Of a stretch of 64,000 nucleotides of DNA, positions 24,504 through 51,489 are shown piece after piece (within the stretch, counting starts at the first letter, position 1; each line of letters begins with the position of its first letter). The notes under the pieces are model-generated. The model made no database searches and was not told where the DNA came from. It was given only the letters and a program-made list of their open reading frames with translations. Location of the stretch: positions 1,998,954 to 2,062,953 of the forward strand of contig JAWQFM010000004.1 in NCBI GenBank assembly GCA_033442325.1, written 5' to 3'. Source of the DNA: Salpingoeca rosetta. Its lineage: Eukaryota > Protista > Choanoflagellata. The position numbers and the translations under genes were made by a program.

Positions 24504-27500
24504 TTGCAGCTTGCAATCCGATAATCCCTTCCCACTCTCAATCTGAGCTTCAACGCGCACACTGACCACCCCACATCCCTCCCCCTCCCACACTCACTCG
24601 TTTCATAGATCTGCATGCGGGAGATCAAGAGGTGCCAGCAAGAATCGAGCGGCATCAGCTATGTGCTCATCCTTGGCAACAAGTATGGCTTCCGCCCCTT
24701 TCCCGCCAAGATCCCTGAGGAGGAGTTCAACCTGCTGAAGGACGAGATGGCCAAGCAAGCCAAGCAAACTGCGTCCACTGTGACCCCAGCTGCGCTCAAC
24801 AAGGCCATGGAGTACATGGACGAGTGGTTCGTCCTGAATGAGAACGTCGTGCCGCCGACCCGCGAGCTCACGCCCGTGAAGAAGGAGCACTCTGATGCGT
24901 GGTGGTCCGACATCTTCCCTACGCTGCAGACGTGTCTGCGCCAGGCGGCAACGGGAGCGCCTGGGCTGTCTGATGAGCGACGCGCCCTGTACGTGCAGAG
25001 CGTGACGGCGGAGGAGATTGAGAACGGCCTGTTCAAGGTGGAGCCGAAAGAGGCGCGCGACAAGGCGTGCTTCGTCTTTGACCGGCGCCTGGAGGGCATC
25101 GACGTTGCATTGGACCCAGACACGGCTAAGCTGTTCATCGACATGGCTGGTGGCGAGGTGGACGAGGAGGCGCAGCAGCAGCTGGAGCGATCGCGTGCGG
25201 AGGCGGTGCCGGCTGCCCTGTCACCATCTCGCATCAAGACCATGACCATCCCATGGGGACCAGGCATCGACCTCGCTCGCACCGACCACGCAGAGTACAT
25301 GCGCACCTTTGCCGACGCCTTCTGCGACACGCTGGCGACGGACATTGAGCGTGTTGCGCGCGAGCACGCGTTTGAGAGCGATACAGTGGTGGAGGAGGCG
25401 GCGGCGCACGCCATGTTCGGCAACCTGCGGCGACGTGGGTTCGTGTCCACAGCAGCCACCCAGCAGACGGTTGATGCTGCCCTTGCACACGTGCAACAAC
25501 GCATTACCGGTGGCAAGGAGGTCGCAGCTCCGTTTGCCATCTGTGGCCCATCTGGCAGTGGCAAGACTTCACTCATGGCCCATATCGCAGGTGCGTTGTG
25601 TGTGTGCGTGCATGCGAATGTCTCTTGTTGTGCTTGCCTTCATGCATGTCCTCATTGTGGGATGCGCTCTGCTTTCCTCTGTCCCATCACATGCTCACAC
25701 ACACACACACACACAAACGCACACATACACACACACGCCATACGCTCACACACTAGGTGCCATCAAAAAAGCCCACCCAGCTGCCGTCGTGGTGTCGCGG
25801 TTCCTGGGCACGTCGCGGGAGAGTGGCACTGCCCGCACCCTGATGGCCAACGTGTACCGCCATATCCACCGCGCACTCAAAGGAAAGAAGCCAGCAGCAG
25901 CGCCAGCAGCCGACTTTGAAAAGCTGACAGAACAGTTCCAGGCCGCCCTCAAGCTTGGCACTGCTCGCAAACCGCTGGTGCTCGTGCTGGACTCGCTTGA
26001 CCAGCTCTCGGACGAGGACCAGGGCCGTAACCTGGAGTGGCTGCCGCTCGCATCACTGCCGCCAAACTGCGCCATCGTCGTCTCCAGTTTGCCGGATGTG
26101 GGCGGATGCTGGGAGGTGCTCAAGGCCTCGCTGCCAGACACCAACCAGCAGCACGTGGCCAAGATCAGCAAAGACGACGCAGACGGCATCCTGAGCACAT
26201 GGCTGGCCGATGCCAAGCGGTCCCTCATCCCTGCACAGCGCAGTGTTGTGCTGGGCGCCTACGAGTCCTGCCCAACACCGCTGTACCTCCGCATCTGCAC
26301 GCAGTTCTTTGCGCTTCGCTGGACCCACAAAGACGCAATTGCACCCGACTTCTTTCCCAAGACGGTGGAGGGCCTGATGGAGAAGGTGTTTGATGAGCTG
26401 GAGACGCGACACGGCAAGGAGACGGTGCGGGCAGCGCTCGGGTACCTCTCTGCCTCGCGCGGCGGGCTGAGCGACAACGAGATGGAGGATCTGCTGTCCT
26501 GCAACGACACCGTCCTGGACGAGATTTACGAGTGGTGGGTGCCGCCCGTCCGCCGCGTTCCCCCGCTCATCTGGGCACGCATCGTGTCTGACCTGGAGGG
26601 CGCGTTGGTGGAGCGTGGCGCTGAGGGCGGTGTCATCATCCGTGCACGGTACCACCGGCAGCACCGCGAGGCAGCAGAGCGACGCTACCTCGGCCTCAAC
26701 TCGCGCAGTGGTGCTGGAAATGACACGGGTGATGGTAGCGACGGTAACGGTGATGGTGCTGGTGACGTCGCCACGTCCTCGTCCTCGTCCACGACCGCTA
26801 CCTCCACTTCCACCACCACCACCACGGCCCTGACGGTGCAGCGGCACGGCGAGCTTGCAGACTACTTCAGCGGCAGGTGGGAGCACGGCCGCCACCTGCA
26901 CGACAAGACGGACGACGCAAGTGCTCTGCGCGACCGCAAAGTGGCCTCCATGAAGACGGTGCTGGCTGGTCGGCTCGATGACCCGCGCTCCGGTGCTGTG
27001 GTCAACGCACGCAAGGTTGCCGTGCTGCCGTTCCACCTCATGCATGCGCAGCGGTGGGAGGAGTGCGCGACAACCCTGTGCGACCTCGAGTTCATTGAGG
27101 CCAAGGCAACAGCGGGGATGGTGCGGCAGCTGGTGGCAGACTTTGAAGACCTGCAGCGCAGTGGTGGTGGTGGTCGTCGTCAAGGTGGCGCACTGGAGAG
27201 CCTGCTCAAGAAACACAGTTTCAACATCTGGACGCGGTTTGTGGCTCGCAACGCCAACATCTTCGAGCGTACACCTGGTGCAGTCATCGCACGCGCCTCG
27301 CTGTATCCAGACCAGACAGCGGTGTTCAAGGCGGCTGAAACTGTGTTGTCAGCGCCAGGTTGCCGCCTACCACGCGTGCGCCAGTTTGAAAAACCGCAAC
27401 AGTTGAGCTCGCTCGCAACCGTGTGCTCCGGGTTTTCGTTTCCGCCAAAGGGCATTGCTTTCACTCGCAATGGCAAGTGGGTGTGCGCCGGCGTGGGCAG

Positions 27501-29467
27501 CAAGCTTCGCGCGTGGGATGCCAATACTGGCAAATCAGTTCTGACACTCAGCATGCCAGGTCAACTGGAATATGTGTGCCGCGTCGTGCAGCTGCCAAAC
27601 GGCCATGTGGCGACGGCGTGTTCGTCTGGGCAGATTCACGTGTGGAACCTCTCGACTCGCGAGCTGGTGTGGACCGTGGAAGTGGCGCAGGCAGAGGAAG
27701 AGTTCCGCTCATTGTATGTACCAGGTGATGATTTGACAGTCCTCGTCATCGTTGGGCCGAAACCGCAGCCGTCTTCTTCTCAGACCGCACAGCCGACCAG
27801 CACGACCACCACTGACCCACGCCGTGTTCACCTGATGCTGTACACACCGGACCTGCGCCAGTGCGTGTGGCGACATGAGATGGACGACACTGTCTTGTCT
27901 TGGCAGCTGCGGGACAACACACTTGTGGCGGGAACCAATGACGGTCGCATTGTGTGGTGGAAGTTGGGCGGCGCGCCGACCATGGCAGCCGCTGTGCAGG
28001 CCATCATGGACCCTATTGAAGGGACGTTGGTGGAGGTGGCAAGCTACGCATTTCTCGTCAAGGAACGAGAGTTGCCATTGCGCCATTTGCCCATGAGTCT
28101 GGTCTCTGGCGGACTTGATGTTGTTGCTGCTGGACGATTCCGAATGCTGTCATACATCAAGGCAGATGGCTCACTTTCAGTGGAGCGACAATTCGAGCAT
28201 GAAATCTCGGCTATTCGTGTTGTGGCAGGCGGCGGCGCGCTGCTGGCCCTCGCTCGCGGCATGTTCGGCATCACCGTTATCAGGGCTGACACGCTGGAGG
28301 CTGTGCATCGAATTCAAGCGCCTGCTAACCGAATCATGGCAGCGACACCTTCTGGCGACCTCCTCGCTTGCTCCGACTTGCAGCAGCCGTTTGTGGCCGT
28401 TTACAGCTTGGAGCAGGTCGATGTGCATGCCAAGGCCTTGACTGATCGAGGGCATCAACAACAGTCACTGATTTCCGAGCCACATGTGGCAATGCTGGCT
28501 GCAGATGGCGCAAGTGGGGCGGGCGAGAAGGAGACTTTACCTGCATTTGCTGTTGGACGCGACGACCTCGGCTTTTACGACGCAGCGACGATGGCGCTTG
28601 TACACACTGTTGCGCTCAAGGAGCACCGGGCGAGTGCCCTGAACGTCAAAGCCGCATCATTGTTTGGTCCATGGCGCAGCCATTTATCGTCCTCGACGCC
28701 GTGCGGCGCAAGATGTACAAGGACGTCATCACATTCCGCGAGATTAAGAATACTGTGGTACCCCCGAGGATGTTGTTCTCTCCAACAAACGACACATCTG
28801 TTGTGGTGGACTGCATGAGCTCCATGCATGTTGTGGCCCTGCCGACATGCAAGTTGGTGTGTAGCCACGGGGTCTGACGACAAGACTGCATGCCTGTGGG
28901 AGCTGACGGCTGACTCTGAAGGTGTCCTCACAGCGTGCGAGATGCTGAGAGGCCGTGACGGCGGTGCTGCTGTGCACAACGACCAGCGATGATGGTGGCG
29001 ATGGTGCGGCTGTTCTTGCCACCTGTGACGGCAACACAATTGTCAAGTTGTGGAGATTGCAGCAAGAAGAGCACCCTTACGTGAGTATCAAGGTGCACAG
29101 CGGATATGCATCGTCTGTGTCGCTGGTGTGGTTGCCAAAGCAGCAGTTGCTGGCGTCTTGTGCACAAGAACAGCATCTCCTGTTGTGGAACCTGGCCGGT
29201 GAGCTTGTGCGAGCAACCAACCTCAAGCCTGCGTGGGCATTTCTGCATCCGAGCTTGAAGTATGTTGTCGCTGAAGCTTATGGTGGCTTGCAGTTTCTCC
29301 ACGCAAGCACGCTTGCACCTGTGTTTCGCGCATACGGGCATGACTTTGGTCTGGAAATCAATACGCGGAACAAACGTGTGCGAATGACGCCCGACGGGCG
29401 CTTCTTTGTTTCTTGGGCCATGGACGATGCCATCCTCGTGCATGACTTCTCGCATCTGACGTTGTGA
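23856..29467 (+). CDS. NACHT/STAND NTPase + WD40 protein (NWD1/NWD2-like, DUF4062-type N-terminus); 3' WD40 region frameshifted
   Basis: MGCHQSK myristoylation-type start; IRLFLSSTFTDTEVERNAL..MRWG; Walker A GPSGSGKT; Walker B LVLVLDSLDQL; GLSDNEMEDLLS; WD repeats. Exons 23856-24350, 24610-25590 and 25758 onward. Frame shifts occur at about 28660, 28860 and 28955. Confidence 0.85.
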
Positions 29468-33055: not shown

Positions 33056-33405
33056 GTGTGGGTGTGTGCGTGCACGTCGTAGGCTGTGGCATCGAGGATT
33101 GGGCGGGCTTTTGAATCCAAGCGCGCTTCGGGGGCAGCGACGACGATGCTCGCAACCACTGACGGTTTGAAGTAGCAGACAGAAGGCGCTTCACTGCCCA
33201 GGTGTGTGTATGCACGTGTGTATGTGTATGCATGGGTGTGCGTGCATGTAGGTAGTTGTGTACATGAGTGTGTGTGTGTCTGTGTGTCTGTCTGTGTCTG
33301 TGTGTCTGTCTGTCTGTCTGTGTGTCTGTCTGTGTCTGTGTGTCTGTCTGTGTGTCTGTGCGTCTCTCTCTCTCTCTCTCTGTGAATCGCCACGCATGTG
33401 TACGC

Positions 33406-33871
33406 ATGCAGTTCGTCTCCTTCACTTCCCTCATTCCCTCACGTCCTCGTCCGCGACGCACGCGCCTGCACTTGCATACAGCTTCAGCGCATTCCTTTCC
33501 TGCGCCATACGACGGCACGGTGTATGTGGCAGACTCATCAACGCAGTCTTCCACCGAGGACAGACAACGGTGTCTGGGCCACCAGCTGCGCAAGCTGTAC
33601 AACATCGAGGCAGACCACGTTGTGCACCTCAGGGATGTGCCACAGCAGCAAGACGGCGTGTCGTGTGGCCTGTTTGCGCTGGCTTACGCCACACTGCCGG
33701 CTGCTGGCCTGCATCCGCTCGACTTGAACTGCGTCAGCATGACGGCACACCAGCTGCGCACGTGGTACTTTCAGTGCATGGCTGATCAGGAGGCAGATGG
33801 TGCGGAGGCGCTGCTCATGAAGTTGCTACAAGGGGCACAACCTAATGACAAAAACAACGACGACAACGACG

Positions 33872-33950
<79 letters not shown>

Positions 33951-34264
33951 AGACGACGACGACAACAGCCTTGAGTCGCGACTCCACCAGCGACGCTGCC
34001 TTTTTGTCTTGCAGAGGCAGCGGGCCCTCCACTTGCAGCCGACAAGAGAAGAGGATCGAATGGCCTTCTCTGCCACAGTGGCCGAGGTGGTTGTGGTGCA
34101 TGACAGGAGCGATGGTGTGGAGGAGGAAAAGGACGTGGTGGTGATTGAGGGTGCTGCGTTCGAAGAGGGTTTCGATGGCGGAGATGTGATCGACTTGTAC
34201 GGAGACAGTTGTGATGACATGGGCGAGCCGCAGCAGCCACACTGGCCACAACAACAACTTCTGC

Positions 34265-34347
<83 letters not shown>

Positions 34348-34729
34348 CTACTACAGCAGCCACACTTGCAACAGCAGTTGCAGTTGCTGCCACAAGTGCA
34401 CCATACCGTCGCTCAGCATGGGCTGCTGAACAATCAGGTCCCGCATTATACCCAGCAACAACAGGCACAGCAACAGCACAACTGCCAGCAGATCCAGCAA
34501 CTGCAGCACTCGGCATCGTGGCAGATTGCGCTGCACCATGCACGAGGCGCCAAGAACAGACGCAGTCGGAGACGACGACGCCAACAGCGCAGACGCAACG
34601 CGCAGAGCACATCAACGTCGTCCGCCTCCATGCCCTGGAATGCGCAGTGTGGTCCCACCACTCCGGTCGCCGTGATGGAGAATTGGCGCATCCCGTCACG
34701 CGGTTCTCGCAGCACGTGGAAGATACACT

Positions 34730-34730
<1 letters not shown>
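33406..34730 (+). pseudogene. Ulp1/C48-like cysteine protease fragment followed by poly-N/poly-Q tracts; possibly a transposon-borne remnant
   Basis: VYVADS...VPQQQDGVSCGLFALAYA matches the Ulp1 Q-x(5)-C-G catalytic motif. No clean upstream His exon was found. Confidence 0.5.
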
Positions 34731-34774
<44 letters not shown>

Positions 34775-35342
34775 GTGCGTGCGTGCGTGCGTGTGTGCGT
34801 GCATGTGTGTGCGTGCATGTGTTTGTTTGTTTGTGTGTTTGCTTGTGTGCGCGTGTGATTGCGTGCACTTGATCCTATGGTCATGTTGTGTTCCAGAGGG
34901 TCACACGACGTGTGTCTTTGTCTGCTTCCACAGCCACTACATCCAGGAGAAACCAGCTTCCGCGTGTTGGAGTACACGCCACCACAGCCGTCACACGTGC
35001 ACGCTGGGGCCAAACAAGCGTAATGAAACAAATTGACAATGGTGCGCGATCAGTTGGCCTGACGCACCGCGTGGTACATTCACATGACGTCAAGCAACTG
35101 CAACGATCTCGTTCACCCTTCCACGCATTGATATGGCAATTATCAGTCATTTTCAATCGTATCAAGCCCACAAATCTCAATGTCGAAGTTGTATGTGAGG
35201 CAGACGTGCAACACCAGCTGGGGAACAGATGGACAGTGCAAGGATTGATGGAAACTCAGTGACAACGAACAAGGTAAGGCGAGGGCGGGAGCCATTGAGT
35301 TCGTGTGCAAGAAGACAACAACAGAAAGGGCTTGACGAGAAA

Positions 35343-36116
35343 TCACTGAACGGGCTGTATGGCGCTTTCTTGAGCAAGTGTCATGTCCTTGTCTTCCTCC
35401 TGAATCAAATTGACTGGCACAAAGTCAGGCAAGCCCGTGGCTTGCGTGTTGGTGAGGAGGAGGGAGGCATCCGCCCTTTCAAAGGCACTTCCCTCCTGTT
35501 CAGCAAAATGCGTAAACCAGGTGGAAAGCTCAATGTGTTGGCACTGGTGTGCTACGGTTACCAGCGTGCAATCGTTGGCCCGAAGACGGTGGGTTGGGCC
35601 TTGTGACAGCCCAATGACGTGCACATTCGCAGGGAGTTCTGCTCCGAGATCAGAGCGAAACTTTTGAGCGAACGTTCCCCCAAAACATTGTGCAAACACG
35701 ACAATTATTTTGAAGTCATCCTTAATCAGGGGCTGCAGATGTTTCTTCAGTCCAGAAAAGCTGTTCCTGCCGTTCCAGAGGCTGTTGGGGCTCCAAAGAA
35801 GGTATTGAGGAGCCATACCCCACAACTTGGACAATGGATATCCGCGAAAGCTGTCCGTGGAAAGACCATGGCAGCATGCCGCAATGACAATCGGCTTCGA
35901 AGAGTCAAACTTCTTGTCGCGGAAGTCCTTTTGCCACCGACTCACTGTCCTAGCCAGCTCTGCCTCCAGCTCTGGCAGGCTGCCGCCGCGCCAGAAACCG
36001 TGGTTTGGCTCGAAGCAATCCTTCATGGAGACATGCAGTGGGATGGTGTAGCGGTCGACCACCTCCTGCGGTTCAGGACTGAACTGGAAGTACAGCGGCA
36101 ACTGTGGGCTTGACAT
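35343..36116 (-). CDS. Intronless 257-aa protein, candidate caspase-hemoglobinase-fold cysteine protease
   Basis: PIVIAACCHG (strand + His-Gly) and KIIVVFAQCFGG (strand + Cys) lie about 60 aa apart, followed by strand VHVIGLS. The ORF is clean and non-repetitive. Confidence 0.55.
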   Translation of the reverse strand: MSSPQLPLYFQFSPEPQEVVDRYTIPLHVSMKDCFEPNHGFWRGGSLPELEAELARTVSRWQKDFRDKKFDSSKPIVIAACCHGLSTDSFRGYPLSKLWGMAPQYLLWSPNSLWNGRNSFSGLKKHLQPLIKDDFKIIVVFAQCFGGTFAQKFRSDLGAELPANVHVIGLSQGPTHRLRANDCTLVTVAHQCQHIELSTWFTHFAEQEGSAFERADASLLLTNTQATGLPDFVPVNLIQEEDKDMTLAQESAIQPVQ

Positions 36117-36563
36117 CGTTCTTGTCTGCTTCTGCTTCCTGCTTTGTGAGACGCGAAGTGATGGTGAAAATGGTGATGTGACATGATGGAGACATGTTTC
36201 GTTTGAAGGATTGTTGTGCTGACCCGATGCGCTCTGCGTGAGTCGTACGCAAAACCGGTGGAACAAGCAAACAGTGCCCACTTTCCCGACCGTACAGTCG
36301 TCCAGTCGACAAATCTATCTCGGATTCTGAAACCCCCAAACACCGAACAATCACGAAATACACCCATTTCCCGAATTGTTGACTGCAATTCCAGAAATCC
36401 ACACACAGTTGAGTTGCATTTCCTGTTGGGGAAGGGGGCACACACCCTCGCGATTTTTTTTCGGGTGCTGCTTGCAGCTCAAAAATATCCGTGTACATTC
36501 ATTCGCCAGTGTCAAAAACAAACCATTTTCGTACGCAAACACTCGCGTTCACCACAGCGAGCC

Positions 36564-37268
36564 ATGGACTTGACTGAGAAGCTCCAGAAGAGAAAACTGC
36601 AGCGCCACCATGGGGACGCTGAGGCGAGGGAAATCCAAGCAGCCCAATCCCAACCCCCCGATGAAGAAGAGTACTGGAAAACACATGGTATGCAAGCCGA
36701 CCAAGGCCCACCAGCTGTTTCGTTCAAACTTTCCAAAAAAGCAAAAGTGAACAGCGAAGGAAAGAAATCACGTTGGACTCGCTATACGTATGCGATTGAC
36801 AAGCAGCCACACGGGGATGTTTCTCTGAATTACGCATCGTCAGGACATGTGCCGGACAGCGTGGAAGAGCTTCTCGATCACATCCACGCGTCTGCCACAA
36901 CGAACTGCCTGCTCACCTGTTTTCAGACGCAATCTCAGCTCATCCTAGAGGCCTTCCAGAGCATCGTGAAGGCAGATAAAGCACAATGGCAAGATCTGGT
37001 GGATCAGCACAACAAGGCAACCCTTGATGGTGGCGACGCGGATGACGCCATCTGTTGGCCATTCGTGGAATCCGCGAAGGATTACCACTGGGCATATCGT
37101 CGCGGCCGATTCTGGATCGAGCAAGCAGGATCTGAGGGACCCCTGCTCATTTGGGAAGCAGACAATGAAGAAGTTGCACAGGACCCAGAACCTTTGTTGA
37201 AGGACGTGGCGTCTCGTGGGGATGGTTCCCGGTATCCAACCCACTTCAAGTTCAAAATCAAGCGTTGA
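36564..37268 (+). CDS. Intronless 234-aa orphan protein, divergent from the caspase-like ORF
   Basis: GCCATGG start context and a complex globular-looking sequence. No motif recognised. Confidence 0.55.
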   Translation: MDLTEKLQKRKLQRHHGDAEAREIQAAQSQPPDEEEYWKTHGMQADQGPPAVSFKLSKKAKVNSEGKKSRWTRYTYAIDKQPHGDVSLNYASSGHVPDSVEELLDHIHASATTNCLLTCFQTQSQLILEAFQSIVKADKAQWQDLVDQHNKATLDGGDADDAICWPFVESAKDYHWAYRRGRFWIEQAGSEGPLLIWEADNEEVAQDPEPLLKDVASRGDGSRYPTHFKFKIKR

Positions 37269-38570: not shown

Positions 38571-40578
38571 TTAAGGTTTCTGAGGAATCATTGTCACGTA
38601 ACCGTCCTCTGACACAATGACAATGAGAACTTGCTGCTTGTTGCGCTTCGCTTGATCATAGTACCTCCACCCACTGTTGAATCTTGCACCGCGACTGCTG
38701 TCACCATTGCGGGACACGGGCCCTGCAGTCATGATTATGCAATGCAAGGAATGAGTGATTTATGGATCTGGAAGGAAGTAGAAGGCGCTGTGCTTATCAG
38801 CGAATTCATGTCACACCAAGGTCCAAGCAGAATGAAACTCACATCAAGCTACATCTCACCGTCAAGGATGACTCCAATGGCGTGACACTTCCCTTTCCGG
38901 TCTAGAAGTACCGCCCCGTCAATACTGGTGACAGCAAGGACCAGCCCTTCATCCAGTAACCTTGAATTCAGCAAACAAGGACGTGAGCTGCTATCAAACG
39001 GCAACCAAATTGTAAGTATTCGAAGCAAACTCATTGCCACCTCCCTCCCTACCTTGGCTGTTTGAGTTTGGTCGACTGGGAGGATAAGCGGTTGGCTTCT
39101 GCTTCAGCGGCGTTGCTGATGACAACCATGGTTCCATGTTTTTGTCTCAGTGCGTGTCCAATAACTGTCCAGATGGCGTGTGAATGGGCGCGATTCCCGA
39201 AAGTGTGTTGGATAGCAGCATTGACATCAGCTTGTCCCAGGCGCTCCTTGGGTAGAGAAACGCCTCCTGAAGCCGAGACAGTGTAGAATGTTGTAAACTC
39301 CTCAGGGCCTCTGCCAGAACTGATCTTGAGCTCCCAACACAGTGGTTTTGTAAACATTACCACAACTTTGTCTCGCTTAATCTCAGCCAAGCGGCAGAGC
39401 CCAACAACTTTGCGAGACGTGTCTAGGATAAGAGCGTGGCCATCGGGAGAAGTCATCTCAAGAAGTTTGCGGGTCCCTTTGATGTCGTCGATGTTGACGG
39501 GGTTTCGAAAAGAGAGAGCGACATGGGCTGGGTCGATGGCGGCAGCAGGGACAATCGCCCCTGTCAAACCGTCGCCCTCATAGGCAGTAGCACTGAGGAT
39601 GACAAGCTCTCTGAATACATTCTTGAGCATCTCGCCTTCCGCAAGCTTGGCCTGGCATGCTCGACGGCGAACTGCAGTGTTATTGCCATTGAAATGTGTC
39701 ATCGGTTGCTGGAGCTCGAGCTTAAGCTGCTCCTTGTTCTTCACGGTGCGATGCAATACAACTACAGTGAGGAATGCCGTGTGTTGGCAACGCACATCTC
39801 GGAAGGCGAAAAAGCATCGAAAGCGTCCATTTTTCCATTTCAGGTTGTTGAGAATGGTCATAAGATGCTCGCCGGGGTCCTCCTCACCATCCTGAGATAG
39901 TTGCAGGTCTTGCATTTCTGGCGCGTCCACCTCGTCGTCTTCACAGGCATCATTGTCTTTGCCGACGCACTGGCTACCACCTGAGTTCTTTCTTGCTTCT
40001 GTCAGTCGCAGGTCGTATCGTTCTCCTTTCGGCTTCTTCGGTGGGAATTGACCCTCGTCGTGCTCAACATCATCAAAATCTTCCTCGTCGTCATCATTAG
40101 GTGCTGGACTGTGCTGACTATTGTCGGTATCATTCTCAGCTTCACCACTCTCTTGGCTGGAAGATGTGGATTTTAGGGTTTTGGCATCATCGAGCACATC
40201 TTGAGATGAAGGCTGATCAACGTCATCTGCGTCCTCGTCGCTGGGTGCCGGCACGTAATCTTCTCCTTGATCTTGAGACTCGTTGCTTTCTTGGCTGCCA
40301 CGCGTCTCCACTTCCTCTGGAAAACGTTGTTTGTGCACGAAATGTGCCATGCTCTGCACCTTTTGGGTGAAGTCTCCTGGCAGAACTTCGAGCGAGCCGC
40401 AGTGGAACTGTCCATTGTTTCGCTCAAAATCGAAGTTGGGGACAGTCAAGGTTTCTTCGGTGATCGTGAGTGAAATCACAGCGCATATCTCCTTGTCTCT
40501 CAGTTCGATTCCATGGTCATGAAGCAACTTGCGAACTAGGTCATGAGCTTCTTGACGAATGCTTTTCACGCTCGTCAT
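38571..40578 (-). CDS. Bacterial-type diadenylate cyclase (DisA_N/DAC domain with N-terminal sensor-like domains), 592 aa; join(40578-39053, 38960-38860, 38722-38571)
   Basis: Splicing two GT-AG introns (39052-38961 phase 2; 38859-38723 phase 1) gives QKHGTMVVIS...AVTSIDGAVLLD..GKCHAIGVILDG...SRGARFNS...VIVSEDGYVTMIPQKP*. The HG, DGA, RGAR and SEDG motifs are all present. The upstream part has AYEG...FRNPVNIDDIKGTRKLLEM. Confidence 0.88.
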
Positions 40579-48561: not shown

Positions 48562-50256
48562 AATGCACACGCAAGCGCATGCACGCACCCCAGAGGCATG
48601 GGAAGCTGCTGCTGTGCTGGGGTGGGGTGATGGCTTCCGAAGAGTGTCGGCAACAGCATCTTGGTGGTTGTCGGAGGGCGCCGATTCCCCGTTCTCAGGT
48701 GTGCTCGAAACTGAAGCGGAGGTCGTGCATGCCTCGTCAACCAGCCTGCTGCTCTTCACGCTGCTGTGGCAGTGAGACGATTTCAACGGAGTACCCGTCC
48801 GTCGCGTGCAATGTCTGCCAGCTCGCCTGACGACACCTCTGCAAGATGTTCGACAGCAACCGTTTTGTGTTCGATCATGGGTGTGGTCTTGATCACCGTT
48901 GGCCCGACACACTGCTGCTGTCGCATACGATGGCCGCCTTGCCCTGGGCACACAATCCACATGCCACGGTGGACTTTGCCTGAGGAGACGCCATGGCTGT
49001 TGTTGTTGTGGTGGTGGTGGTGGAGTCGAGTGGCCACATGCAGCAGCAGCAGCAGGTTCACGTTGTTCTTCTGCTCCTCCATCCACCGTCTGGCAGCTGG
49101 CTCACACTCAACATCACGCATGCTTGCACCTGTCCTGGTGAAGGAGGAGCACGCCGTGTTAGTGGAGAGGAGGCGTTGCGCATGCATGCTGGTGCCAACC
49201 AGACGGAGGGAGGAAGGGCACACACTCCTCATGATACCGGCAGTGGTGGCTGGGGAGTGTCTGGGACAGAGAGGGACCGCTGCATCACACACGTACATCA
49301 GGTGCACCTGTGTGCGTCCTTGGCTGTGGGGACACTGCGTTCACAGGGGAAAGAGGCAGGGTGGACAAGATGGTGGTGGGAGGAGGAGGAGAGCGTCACG
49401 ATGTCAGACATGATGTCAGAAGCGAGAGGAGGAAAGGTGCACCAGCACAAGCTGGGGGTGATGGAAGAGAGGAAGACGGACATGAGCACGTGTCATATGA
49501 AGCAATGTGTGGAGTATGTGTGCGTATGTGTTTACGTGTGTTGCGCAGATAAGGCTGAGCAATGCAATGCAACGAAATGGAGTGATCTCACACTCACCTT
49601 TGTGTGAGCAGTGCATTCTTCAGTCACGATGCCTGTCTCCTTGACATGAGGTCAATTCACGCCCTCCTTTTGCACTGCGTGATGAAGCTGTGGTGGGGGT
49701 GCAGCACAGCAAGACACCGACATCGCGTGCCGTGTGTGCTCTGTCCTTGTTGGTGCAGTGATGAGCTGATGAAGGCAAGGAAGGATGTTGGATGGAAGGC
49801 TGTCTCAAGGGATGGATGCGTTTCAACGTGCTGCCTTCCACAACACTTTTCTATCTATCTAAGCGGCGCCTGCTCTCACACACATTCGCCCATGCACACC
49901 GCTGCCCTCTGTTTTACCCCTTCCCCATCTCTGAGCGCTGGGAACAGTGTAAGATTTCAGCGAGTTTTCCAATAAAAAGACAACAAACACAACACACCAC
50001 AACAGCGAACTTGCTTGTTGTGTGTGGCTGGAAATCCAATGCACGATTCCCAACAATCGTCCACAACCACAACCAGCCAAAACGCCACAAACAATCCACC
50101 AATCCTGTCTTCTCTTCTCTTCTTCTCTTGGTGCTGCGCCTGCCCTGCAAACAGACACACGCGAACGAGGAAGGAGGGAGGCACACTTCTCTTCTCCTTC
50201 TCTCCTTCTTCTCCTCTCCTCTTCTCTCCTTGTCTTCTCTCTTCTTCTCTGCTTGT

Positions 50257-51489
50257 ATGGTGAGAACGACGGGGTGCCTGCAGGCACGTGGGATGTTGCT
50301 GCTTCCCGTGCTGGTGGCGGTTGCAGTGTGCTGGATGCCGTTCATCAGCAGCGTTGTTGGAGAGGTGACGCTGTTGGAGGATGATGCGGGCGCGCTTCAC
50401 ATCAACACGAGCGACCCCATGAGCCAGCCCGTGTTTGTGAACGGGGTGAACGTGCACGACACGCTCAGCATGTTGATGAGCACCGTGTCGGCGCAGCAGA
50501 GCACAATCGATCGCGTCTATGGAAAAGTGTGCACCCCGAGTGCCAGAACGTTCGGCAAACTTGAGACGTCAGGAAACAAATGGATTGGCGGGGTACTGGC
50601 CAACAACGGCCTAATCTATGCTGTGCCATTCTTCGCGTCCTCCGTGCTCATCATTGACCCCAGCTCTAACACCGTCGACACGACCACTATCGCTGAGTTT
50701 GCTAGAGGCGGAGGCAAATGGGCCGGTGCAGCTTTGTCACACAACGGTCTCATCTACATGTTCCCGTCAAACACGCAGGCGATCCTCACCATCGACCCAG
50801 TCACCAACACAGTTGACACCACGACGTTGGATGATTTGCCACCTTCCAGAAACAAATGGTACAGCGGATTGGCAGCAAACAATGGCCTCATCTTCGGCAT
50901 TCCTTTGTACTCCACATCTGTGTTGATTGTGGATGCGATGACCAACACCACCGACATCACCACGTTGTCAGGGCTTTCCTCGGAGGGTAACAAATGGTAC
51001 GGTGGCGTCCAGGCAGACAACGGCTTCATCTACTGCATTCCGTTGCGGGAAACATCGGTCCTCATCATCAACCCTGTCTCTCTCACGATGGACCTCACGA
51101 CCCTCTTCGGCTTGGACTCGGGCGCTGTTTGGCATGGGGCTGTCCTTGCGAACAATGGTCTCATTTACACTTTCCCTGGTTTTACAAAGAAGGCGCTCGT
51201 CATTGATCCAGCCTCAAACACAATCAGCCCCCTGGTTGTGGCCAGCCCAACTTCTTCAGTCAAGTGGCTTGGTGGCGTGCTCGCACCCAATGGCAACATC
51301 ATTGGCATTCCATTTGGCTCACCAAATGTCTTCATCTTCGATCCAACTACCAACACCACTGACACAACAAGCATCGGTGGACTTGCTGGTACCCAAAAGT
51401 GGTATGATGGCGTGCTCGCACCAAACGGCCTCATCTATGGCATCCCAGACTTCGCAGATACCGTCCTTGTCATCGACCCTGGCTGCTAA
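50257..51489 (+). CDS. Intronless secreted beta-propeller-like repeat protein (410 aa)
   Basis: Signal-peptide-like LLLPVLVAVAVCW, then about 6-7 copies of a roughly 46-aa unit KWxGGVLAxNGLIYxIPxxxxSVLIIDPxTNTxDTT. Confidence 0.85.
   Translation: MVRTTGCLQARGMLLLPVLVAVAVCWMPFISSVVGEVTLLEDDAGALHINTSDPMSQPVFVNGVNVHDTLSMLMSTVSAQQSTIDRVYGKVCTPSARTFGKLETSGNKWIGGVLANNGLIYAVPFFASSVLIIDPSSNTVDTTTIAEFARGGGKWAGAALSHNGLIYMFPSNTQAILTIDPVTNTVDTTTLDDLPPSRNKWYSGLAANNGLIFGIPLYSTSVLIVDAMTNTTDITTLSGLSSEGNKWYGGVQADNGFIYCIPLRETSVLIINPVSLTMDLTTLFGLDSGAVWHGAVLANNGLIYTFPGFTKKALVIDPASNTISPLVVASPTSSVKWLGGVLAPNGNIIGIPFGSPNVFIFDPTTNTTDTTSIGGLAGTQKWYDGVLAPNGLIYGIPDFADTVLVIDPGC

What the first reader, a model, noticed from the sequence alone, without database searches (positions are those of the whole stretch)
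38571..40578. Intron-containing bacterial-type diadenylate cyclase in a eukaryotic genome
Seen: the 509-aa ORF stops just after HGTMVVIS..AEANRL..Q. Removing two small GT-AG introns with matching phases completes a DAC domain (SIDGAVLLD, AIGVILDG, RGARFNS, IVSEDG) that ends at a natural stop, 592 aa in total. Known: DisA_N/DAC enzymes make c-di-AMP and are regarded as bacterial/archaeal. The RGAR-type with YEG...RKLLE N-terminal domains resembles, from my recollection, bacterial conflict-system DACs (DACNG/DACNH-type sensors) rather than housekeeping CdaA/DisA. Inference: a horizontally acquired, domesticated enzyme. The introns and the acidic disordered N-terminal extension argue against contamination. 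It could give a close animal relative its own cyclic-dinucleotide messenger, separate from cGAS.
Basis: partly seen in the sequence, partly recalled or inferred. Interest (0 to 1): 0.95.

Follow-up and report, generated by a model that had tools for sequence, protein, structure and literature searches.

The report
Bacterial-type diadenylate cyclase gene in a choanoflagellate
The choanoflagellate Salpingoeca rosetta carries an intact nuclear gene with two introns that it acquired from bacteria. The gene encodes a sensor-linked diadenylate cyclase of the family bacteria use next to anti-phage systems, so this close relative of animals may make cyclic di-AMP itself, though nobody has tested that.

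Summary
On the minus strand a 509-codon ORF (40578..39049) continues through two GT..AG introns (39052..38961 and 38859..38723) into two short exons and ends at TAA 38573..38571, giving 592 aa.

The window is Salpingoeca rosetta. The public model PTSG_02954 (371 aa, on a 2.08-Mb scaffold) uses exactly these junctions but starts at Met222.

The three exons match one bacterial profile (NCBIfam NF053872, DS-2 anti-phage protein) in unbroken order. Pfam finds the DACNH sensor domain. An AlphaFold model (residues 80-371, pLDDT mostly above 85) matches only DisA/CdaA/DacA/CdaM structures.

All family-invariant residues are kept: YEG, RKLLE, HGTM, DGA, RGAR-F-N and SEDG. Bacterial proteins with the same motifs were reported to make 3'3'-c-di-AMP in vitro.

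Relatives are found in more than 580 bacterial and archaeal species at 31-41% identity. No other eukaryote and no close orthologue was found. The donor lineage is unresolved.

The protein lacks the DACNG domain, the C-terminal helix bundle and the CD-NTase/Cap15 partner genes, so it is not a canonical DS-2C/CdaG. It resembles the stand-alone bacterial forms without the bundle.

Enzyme activity, receptor and biological role are untested. The gene is in databases with domain labels, but I found no paper about it.

The parts
38571..40578 (-). Whole gene (S. rosetta PTSG_02954, long model): 3 exons and 2 introns, giving a 592-aa product. The public model has 371 aa and starts at the ATG at 39915..39913.
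39053..40578 (-). Exon 1. It ends in phase 2 (...CCA AG|G).
   Evidence: The junction is identical in P0001.
39916..40578 (-). N-terminal 221 codons, absent from the public model. They are probably coding. No homologue or domain was found.
   Evidence: The frame is open for 255 codons, versus 6-19 stops in the other frames; 0 of 20000 shuffles were open. GC by codon position is like the rest of the gene. There were no Pfam or NCBIfam hits. The AF2 model shows only two helices at pLDDT 70-79 in residues 1-37.
39871..40293 (-). Acidic low-complexity stretch, residues 96-236: 46 of 141 residues are D or E. Predicted disordered.
   Evidence: pLDDT below 50
39325..39618 (-). DACNH domain (ORF residues 321-418) carrying the invariant YEG, RKLLE and WEL motifs.
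   Evidence: Pfam PF21750, E = 1.1e-11, 45 bits against a cut-off of 27. Invariant columns. pLDDT above 88.
39053..39240 (-). First part of the DAC domain, from about residue 447, including HGTMVVIS and AEAEANRL.
38961..39052 (-). Intron 1: 92 nt, GT..AG, with in-frame stops if it were retained.
38860..38960 (-). Exon 2: the middle of the DAC domain.
   Evidence: NF053872 profile positions 413-444, E = 1.4e-11
38912..38920 (-). DGA active-site motif: D523-G524-A525 in the 592-aa model, D302-A304 in P0001.
   Evidence: Invariant in 67 sequences. Aligned to the DGA of PDB 2fb5.
38723..38859 (-). Intron 2: 137 nt, GT..AG.
38571..38722 (-). Exon 3: the end of the DAC domain and the TAA stop (38573..38571). 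The protein ends 2-3 residues after the domain.
   Evidence: NF053872 profile positions 448-489, E = 1.5e-12
38676..38693 (-). RGARFN motif, the family's counterpart of the canonical G-T-R-H-R. The first Arg is kept, His is replaced by Phe, and the second Arg by Asn.
   Evidence: Alignment to 2fb5. R, G, R and N are invariant in the family.
38601..38612 (-). SEDG motif, the counterpart of the canonical (V)SEE.

Best explanation
This is a real nuclear gene of Salpingoeca rosetta, PTSG_02954. It descends from a bacterial DACNH-DAC diadenylate cyclase of the CdaG/DS-2C lineage, the DAC family that bacteria encode in defence islands.

After transfer it gained two spliceosomal introns inside the catalytic domain. 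Its N-terminal part is now unrecognisable and partly acidic and disordered. It has no C-terminal helix bundle, like the stand-alone bacterial forms.

Shown: the gene structure, the family, the fold, and retention of every family-invariant residue.

Inferred:
- The protein is a soluble sensor-cyclase.
- Two DAC domains pair head to head, each holding one ATP.
- Together they form 3'3'-c-di-AMP, using D523/G524 and R556.
- The DACNH domain, with its own invariant YEG / RKLLE / WEL site, gates this step.

The signal that is sensed and the receptor of the product in S. rosetta are unknown. S. rosetta is reported to lack STING, so any pathway would not run through cGAS-STING.
For: **Structure and identity**
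- Gene structure. Identity with P0001 on a 2.08-Mb scaffold.
- The NF053872 profile is matched in unbroken order across the three exons. On the spliced protein it scores 2.2e-66, residues 94-369 against profile positions 221-489.
- Pfam DACNH: 1.2e-11.
- AF2 model: mean pLDDT 82.6, and about 90 or more in most 10-residue blocks from residue 100.
- Foldseek against the PDB: the top 50 hits are all diadenylate cyclases, E from 3.5e-5, with TM about 0.6 when normalised to CdaA.
- The DAC-only profile hits 2fb5 at 3.9e-4, with the DGA, G-x-R and SE(D/E) motifs aligned.

**Conservation**
- All 19 columns invariant in 67 sequences are kept by the S. rosetta protein.

**Activity of bacterial relatives**
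- DS-2C proteins from Hymenobacter and Flagellimonas were reported active in vitro. LC-MS identified c-di-AMP as the product of the two Hymenobacter enzymes (bioRxiv 10.64898/2026.08.10.743927).
- The Flagellimonas okinawensis gene is locus L030 here, at 36% identity.

**Distribution**
- 1891 relatives, the best non-self at 41% identity.
- 581 bacterial or archaeal loci matched in the genome collection.
- The named members nearest S. rosetta are Desulfovibrio, Priestia and Halanaerobium.
- In three trees the protein always sits among bacterial rows.

**Eukaryotic setting**
- Eukaryotic flanks.
- Only M. brevicollis and S. macrocollata are reported to have both STING and cGAS homologues, and S. 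rosetta was not killed by 2'3'-cGAMP (PMC8592570).
Against: - No transcript, protein or product data could be reached.
- The Pfam DAC model does not hit the spliced protein at E <= 0.1 in this copy. Exon 3 alone gives E = 0.1. The link to canonical DACs therefore rests on fold, on the family profile, and on bacterial relatives that do hit Pfam DAC (1e-11 and 8e-9).
- The canonical RHR motif is changed to R-F-N.
- The score against NF053872 is 224 bits, against an equivalog cut-off of 630.
- DACNG, the helix bundle and the partner genes are missing, so regulation may differ from any studied system.
- The branch is long (1.5-1.7 substitutions per site) and the sister group changes with sampling.
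- GC3 of the gene (0.50-0.57) is below that of neighbouring genes (0.60-0.73). This fits a foreign gene but also a weakly expressed one.
Confidence: 0.72

Rival explanations
1. Bacterial contamination or a chimeric assembly. S. rosetta cultures contain Bacteroidota prey, and the DAC gene could be bacterial DNA joined to eukaryotic sequence by mistake.
For: The family is common in Bacteroidota, including Algoriphagus (L034). The gene's GC3 is lower than that of its neighbours.
Against: - Two GT..AG introns interrupt the conserved domain, and the profile match continues exactly across them.
- The best bacterial identity is only 41%.
- The gene lies inside a 2.08-Mb scaffold, with eukaryotic genes and CA microsatellites on both sides, within 200 nt of the gene.
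- The N-terminal 315 residues have no bacterial counterpart.
Confidence: 0.02
2. A decaying relic: a transferred gene that is no longer functional or no longer a cyclase, kept open by chance or used only as a nucleotide-binding module.
For: - It occurs in a single species.
- The branch is long.
- DACNG and the helix bundle are lost.
- The Pfam DAC score is below threshold.
- The codon composition is atypical.
Against: - The 592-codon frame is intact across three exons.
- All 19 family-invariant residues, including DGA, R..N and S.D, are kept despite about 60% overall divergence.
- Both structured domains are modelled with confidence.
- Intact bacterial relatives also lack the bundle, and Hymenobacter copies here have that form (L023 and L036). 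The DS-2C proteins reported active came from other Hymenobacter species, which I did not examine.
Confidence: 0.12
3. An active nucleotide cyclase whose product is not 3'3'-c-di-AMP, for example a mixed purine-pyrimidine dinucleotide.
For: A defence-associated DAC (PanS) was reported to make 3'3'-cUA through remodelling of a lid loop. The RHR motif is altered here.
Against: The proteins that make cUA belong to the minimal DisA_N/PanS class, not to the DACNG/DACNH class. The two DS-2C proteins analysed by LC-MS made c-di-AMP, and S. rosetta shares their motifs.
Confidence: 0.12

Closest known systems
DS-2C / CdaG: bacterial DACNG-DACNH-DAC-helix-bundle proteins of the DS-2 variant of CBASS (NCBIfam NF053872)
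   Same: - The DACNH and DAC domains match with all invariant motifs (YEG, RKLLE, WEL, HGTM, DGA, GVILDG, RGAR-x-N, SEDG).
- The profile match is 2e-66, at 31-41% identity.
   Different: - No DACNG is detectable.
- There is no C-terminal helix bundle.
- There is no neighbouring CD-NTase or Cap15-type effector. L030 has SMODS plus Cap15_CD_rec directly upstream.
- The host is a eukaryote and the gene has two introns.
- The first roughly 315 residues are new, and part of them is acidic.
- The score is far below the equivalog cut-off.
Stand-alone bacterial DACNH-DAC proteins without the helix bundle, for example from Hymenobacter, Priestia, Halanaerobium, Desulfovibrio and the metagenomic P0014/P0160. 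From memory of Galperin 2023 this may be the 'CdaH' type; that paper was not available to check.
   Same: - The protein ends 0-3 residues after the DAC domain.
- The gene has no CBASS partner genes beside it.
- It shares an insertion in a DACNH hairpin with P0014 and P0029.
- It groups with them in two of three trees.
   Different: - Their N-terminal part is still a recognisable, divergent DACNG (hhalign 81%, E = 1e-5). That of S. rosetta is not.
- Support for the grouping is weak and depends on sampling. The careful tree instead pairs the protein with P0011.
Housekeeping diadenylate cyclases: DisA, CdaA/DacA and CdaM (Pfam PF02457)
   Same: - The catalytic fold is the same.
- The DGA motif, the first Arg of RHR and the SE(D/E) strand are aligned.
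   Different: - Sequence similarity is marginal: there is no Pfam hit on the whole protein and identity in structural alignments is 12-22%.
- RHR is replaced by R-F-N.
- There is no transmembrane segment or HhH DNA-binding domain. A DACNH domain lies upstream instead.
Eukaryotic cyclic-dinucleotide signalling acquired from or shared with bacteria: cGAS/cGLR-STING, and Dictyostelium c-di-GMP
   Same: The idea is the same: a eukaryote using a bacterial-type cyclic-dinucleotide synthase.
   Different: The enzyme fold is unrelated (DAC versus CD-NTase or GGDEF). S. rosetta is reported to have no STING homologue. No receptor is known, and nothing has been shown experimentally.

Membership tests
DAC superfamily (DisA_N, PF02457) | Significant match to the Pfam DAC model | tested here: inconclusive
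   There is no hit at E <= 0.1 on P0001 with PF02457.21. Exon 3 alone gives E = 0.1 and 12.6 bits. The collection's precomputed table lists PF02457.22 for P0001. Bacterial relatives hit at 1e-11 and 8e-9.
DAC superfamily (DisA_N, PF02457) | DAC fold | tested here: met
   AF2 pLDDT is 83 or more in every 10-residue block over residues 225-370. The top 50 PDB matches are all DisA/CdaA/DacA/CdaM, with E from 3.5e-5.
DAC superfamily (DisA_N, PF02457) | DGA active-site motif | tested here: met
   D302-G303-A304 of P0001 are invariant or nearly so in the family. They align to the DGA of 2fb5.
DAC superfamily (DisA_N, PF02457) | RHR active-site motif | tested here: not met
   The aligned residues are R335-F336-N337, so only the first Arg is kept. 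This is the family-wide state (RGAR[YF]N). Bacterial proteins of this class are reported active.
DAC superfamily (DisA_N, PF02457) | Synthesis of c-di-AMP from ATP | not testable with these tools
   This needs a biochemical assay.
DS-2C / CdaG (NF053872) | Score above the equivalog cut-off (630 bits) over the full length | tested here: not met
   The score is 224 bits and covers only profile positions 221-489 of 576.
DS-2C / CdaG (NF053872) | DACNG N-terminal domain | tested here: not met
   - There is no Pfam hit on the 509-aa ORF at E <= 1.
- hhalign of residues 1-330 against a 38-sequence DACNG alignment gives a probability below 1%.
- The AF2 model of the N-terminus has low confidence.
DS-2C / CdaG (NF053872) | DACNH domain | tested here: met
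   PF21750, E = 1.1e-11, 45 bits against a cut-off of 27.
DS-2C / CdaG (NF053872) | C-terminal helix bundle of about 90 aa | tested here: not met
   The protein ends 2-3 residues after the DAC domain at a TAA stop.
DS-2C / CdaG (NF053872) | Gene neighbourhood with a CD-NTase and a Cap15-type 2TM-beta effector | tested here: not met
   The neighbours in the window are an orphan ORF, a NACHT-WD40 gene and a kinase, with no SMODS or Cap15 hit. The bacterial L030 does have both. Only long ORFs of this one window were scanned, not the whole genome.
Bundle-less stand-alone DACNH-DAC proteins | DACNH followed by DAC, ending at the DAC domain, with no CBASS partner genes | tested here: met
Bundle-less stand-alone DACNH-DAC proteins | Phylogenetic placement inside that group | tested here: inconclusive
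   - Tree 1: SH-aLRT 96, but with a long-branch warning.
- Tree 3: inside a 20-row clade with support 39, 80 and 90.
- Tree 2: paired with the bundle-bearing P0011 at 98/93.

The most novel reading that the evidence does not exclude
S. rosetta runs an endogenous, STING-independent second-messenger pathway. The DACNH-DAC enzyme is switched on by a microbial or viral cue and makes c-di-AMP, which a still unknown eukaryotic receptor reads. This would be the first DAC-based cyclic-dinucleotide signalling system in a eukaryote, and a further case of a bacterial anti-phage module reused by a close relative of animals.
Probability: 0.25. Interest if true: 0.85.

Novelty: new member of a known kind. 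Interest (0 to 1): 0.62.

Why it matters
Diadenylate cyclases are treated as enzymes of bacteria and archaea. In animals, c-di-AMP is known as a foreign molecule that betrays bacteria to STING and other sensors. A eukaryote that makes it would blur that distinction.

It would also extend the list of bacterial immune signalling enzymes taken up by eukaryotes (CD-NTases, STING, TIR, viperin) to the last major cyclase fold.

The case can be tested directly, because transfection and CRISPR editing have been developed for S. rosetta (cited in PMC8592570). The bacterial sister proteins were shown to be active only in 2026 preprints, and the role of DACNH is open there too, so the choanoflagellate copy offers an independent view of that domain.

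Two things temper this. Gene transfer from prey bacteria into choanoflagellates is reported as frequent (PMC4046809). And this is one gene in one species, with no functional data.

Tried and rejected
- **PADLOC models:** no hit for any exon.
- **Full-length family profile against PDB sequences:** only chance hits. The domain-only profile was needed.
- **Is the N-terminus a hidden DACNG?**
  - hhalign against the bacterial DACNG alignment found nothing.
  - hhalign against the N-termini of the nearest clade found nothing.
  - AF2 on the exon-1 ORF with 62 homologues gave low confidence for residues 38-300.
  - This is left unresolved rather than disproved.
- **Is the 312-aa ORF downstream (35343..36281) a transferred partner gene?**
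  - BLASTP against the gene that follows the Flagellimonas nanhaiensis DAC showed no similarity.
  - Pfam, NCBIfam and PDB gave no hits.
  - The 5.8-billion-protein search returned only the protein itself.
- **Viral route:** six IMG/VR contigs carry the family. None was close (38% identity or less), and there was no BFVD fold match.
- **Donor lineage:** three trees gave three different nearest neighbours, so I name no donor.
- **Literature:**
  - No paper mentions PTSG_02954.
  - The two papers that contain both 'diadenylate cyclase' and 'choanoflagellate' are about bacterial STING and cGAMP signalling, judging by title and abstract. I did not open them.
  - No paper on transferred eukaryotic DACs turned up.
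  - Galperin 2023 (PMC10127676), which defined DACNG and DACNH, is not held, so the 'CdaH' label rests on memory only.
Full report
**1. What is in the sequence**

On the minus strand an ATG at 40578 opens a 509-codon ORF that runs into a TAG at 39051..39049. Eight nucleotides before the end of that ORF lies a GT (39052..39051). Treating 39052..38961 (92 nt, GT..AG) and 38859..38723 (137 nt, GT..AG) as introns joins the ORF in phase to a 101-nt exon and a 152-nt exon ending in TAA. The CDS is then 1779 nt, or 592 codons, with no internal stop.

Neither intron length is divisible by three, and intron 1 carries stops in the exon-1 frame.

**2. Where it comes from**

The ORF is 100% identical to 'hypothetical protein PTSG_02954 [Salpingoeca rosetta]'. 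UniRef names this protein 'DAC domain-containing protein'. It has 371 aa and lies on a contig of 2,078,128 bp.

That public protein is an exact suffix of my 592-aa model, starting at residue 222. The public annotation therefore uses the same two splice junctions but a later start codon (ATG 39915..39913).

The rest of the window is ordinary choanoflagellate sequence:
- an NWD1-like NACHT-WD40 gene (25309..29464)
- a protein kinase (around 42 kb)
- a multi-exon M1 aminopeptidase
- a UBA protein
- 95 CA/TG microsatellites, and no tRNA or Rfam match

Contamination or chimerism is very unlikely. No contig seen here was taken to be human.

**3. What the protein is**

- Pfam finds DACNH on ORF residues 321-418 (E = 1e-11, above the cut-off).
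- NCBIfam NF053872 ('DS2_3 anti-phage protein') matches the three exons separately and in unbroken order, at profile positions 222-409, 413-444 and 448-489. This is independent proof of the splice model.
- The same profile matches the spliced protein at 2e-66.
- An AlphaFold2 model built with 66 homologues has mean pLDDT 82.6. Most blocks from residue 100 to 370 are near or above 90.
- Its 50 best matches among solved structures are all diadenylate cyclases: DisA, CdaA, DacA and CdaM.
- A profile of the DAC domain alone reaches the Bacillus cereus DAC structure 2fb5 at E = 4e-4. That alignment puts:
  - family DGA on canonical DGA
  - family G-A-R-[YF]-N on canonical G-T-R-H-R
  - family SED on canonical SEE
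- The Pfam DAC model does not reach significance on this protein in the copy used here. It does on bacterial relatives (1e-11 and 8e-9).

**4. Relatives**

An exhaustive HMMER search of 1.84 billion cluster representatives gives 1891 relatives. The best non-self hit is 41% identical.

A scan of one genome for each of 185,579 prokaryotic species gives 581 confirmed loci. They fall in Bacteroidota (Pedobacter, Hymenobacter, Flagellimonas, Algoriphagus), Bacillota, Actinomycetota, Cyanobacteria, Myxococcota and Chloroflexota, plus a few methanogens, at 31-40% identity.

No other eukaryotic sequence appeared in any search. The collection does include EukProt, which holds P0001. I cannot exclude a eukaryotic copy among the unnamed metagenomic hits.

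Two 2026 preprints describe the bacterial proteins. They call them DS-2C or CdaG and give the architecture as DACNG-DACNH-DAC plus a C-terminal helix bundle. The genes lie next to a CD-NTase and a 2TM-beta effector. DS-2C proteins from Hymenobacter and Flagellimonas were active in vitro, and LC-MS identified c-di-AMP for the two Hymenobacter enzymes. I confirmed that operon in Flagellimonas okinawensis: SMODS, Cap15_CD_rec, the DAC gene, then an integrase.

**5. How the S. rosetta protein differs**

- It keeps every column that is invariant in 67 sequences.
- It has no detectable DACNG.
- It ends 2-3 residues after the DAC domain.
- It has no partner genes nearby.

A bacterial subgroup has the same short C-terminus and stands alone in the genome. 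It includes Hymenobacter, Priestia, Halanaerobium, Desulfovibrio and the metagenomic P0014/P0160.

The trees place the protein as follows:
- In two of three trees S. rosetta falls with that subgroup.
- In the third, careful but smaller, tree it pairs with a bundle-bearing metagenomic protein, P0011.
- Its branch is long (1.5-1.7 substitutions per site), so the donor is unresolved.
- It is always nested among bacterial rows.

**6. The N-terminus**

The 221 codons upstream of the annotated start are open together with 34 further upstream codons. The other five frames have 6-19 stops over the same stretch, and shuffles almost never give an open frame. GC by codon position resembles the rest of the gene.

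It has no homologue or domain, however. Residues 96-236 are acidic and predicted disordered, and AF2 is confident only for two short helices at the very start. The start codon needs transcript data.

**7. Mechanism**

Shown: an intact, intron-bearing gene with a DACNH-DAC core that retains the family's catalytic and sensor-domain residues.

Inferred:
- From the established mechanism of DAC enzymes, two domains pair, one ATP binds to each, and the DGA and Arg residues contact phosphate and ribose.
- From the reported activity of bacterial DS-2C, the protein most likely makes 3'3'-c-di-AMP under control of DACNH.

What it senses and what reads the product are unknown. S. rosetta is reported to lack a STING homologue and did not respond to 2'3'-cGAMP (PMC8592570).

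**8. Novelty and score**

The gene model and its domain labels are already in public databases. I found no paper that mentions the gene or any transferred eukaryotic DAC.

It is a new, eukaryotic member of a known bacterial family, not a new kind of system. Interest is moderate to high. The host and the family are a striking combination and the question is directly testable. But this is a single-species transfer with no functional data, and gene transfer into choanoflagellates is reported as common (PMC4046809).

Noticed in passing
window 35343-36281 (-): An orphan gene lies 2.3 kb downstream of the DAC gene on the same strand, in the same low-GC (0.50) stretch. It is annotated as P0288 (257 aa). 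It has no homologue among 5.8 billion proteins and no Pfam, NCBIfam or PDB hit. It contains ...AACCHG... and ...AQCFGG..., which from memory resemble a caspase-like His/Cys pair, but no search supports that.
   Followed up: partly
window 36216-37268 (+): A 350-aa ORF with no family match overlaps the 5' end of the orphan ORF on the opposite strand. I cannot tell whether it is a gene.
   Followed up: partly
window 38571-40578 versus neighbouring genes: GC3 of the DAC gene (0.50-0.57) is lower than that of six neighbouring coding stretches (0.60-0.73). The 36-40 kb stretch has among the lowest GC in the window (0.498). This is consistent with incomplete adaptation of a foreign gene, or with low expression.
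   Followed up: partly
window 25309-29464 (+): A large NWD1-like STAND NTPase gene (AAA_16/NACHT, an NWD1 winged helix and an APAF1-like helical domain, followed by WD40 repeats) lies 9 kb from the DAC gene. It has an innate-immunity-type architecture. No link to the DAC gene was shown.
   Followed up: no
window 49792-51489 (+): A 565-aa ORF made of beta-propeller-like repeats matches DUF5074 (1.6e-9) and DUF6923. From memory these families are mostly bacterial, so this may be another transferred gene.
   Followed up: no
window 33268-34872 (+): A long ORF contains runs of about 25 Asn and about 30 Gln. Low-complexity coding or microsatellite-like sequence of this kind is typical of the window.
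   Followed up: no
window 39913-39915 versus 40576-40578: The public model PTSG_02954 starts at Met222 of a frame that stays open for 255 codons further upstream. The annotation may be truncated at its 5' end.
   Followed up: partly
L030 5801-10889; L023, L044, L048, L081: The bacterial family comes in two forms. One has a C-terminal helix bundle; the one case examined (L030) sits in a SMODS + Cap15 operon next to an integrase. The other lacks the bundle and stands alone; in Ureibacillus (L044) it lies next to an AbiC-like gene.
   Followed up: partly
L011 (Methanobrevibacter) and L033 (Methanosarcinaceae): Archaeal copies sit inside bacterial clades. L011 pairs with a Bacteroidota MAG (SH-aLRT 92, below the tree's star threshold), so the family also appears to move between domains among prokaryotes.
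   Followed up: no
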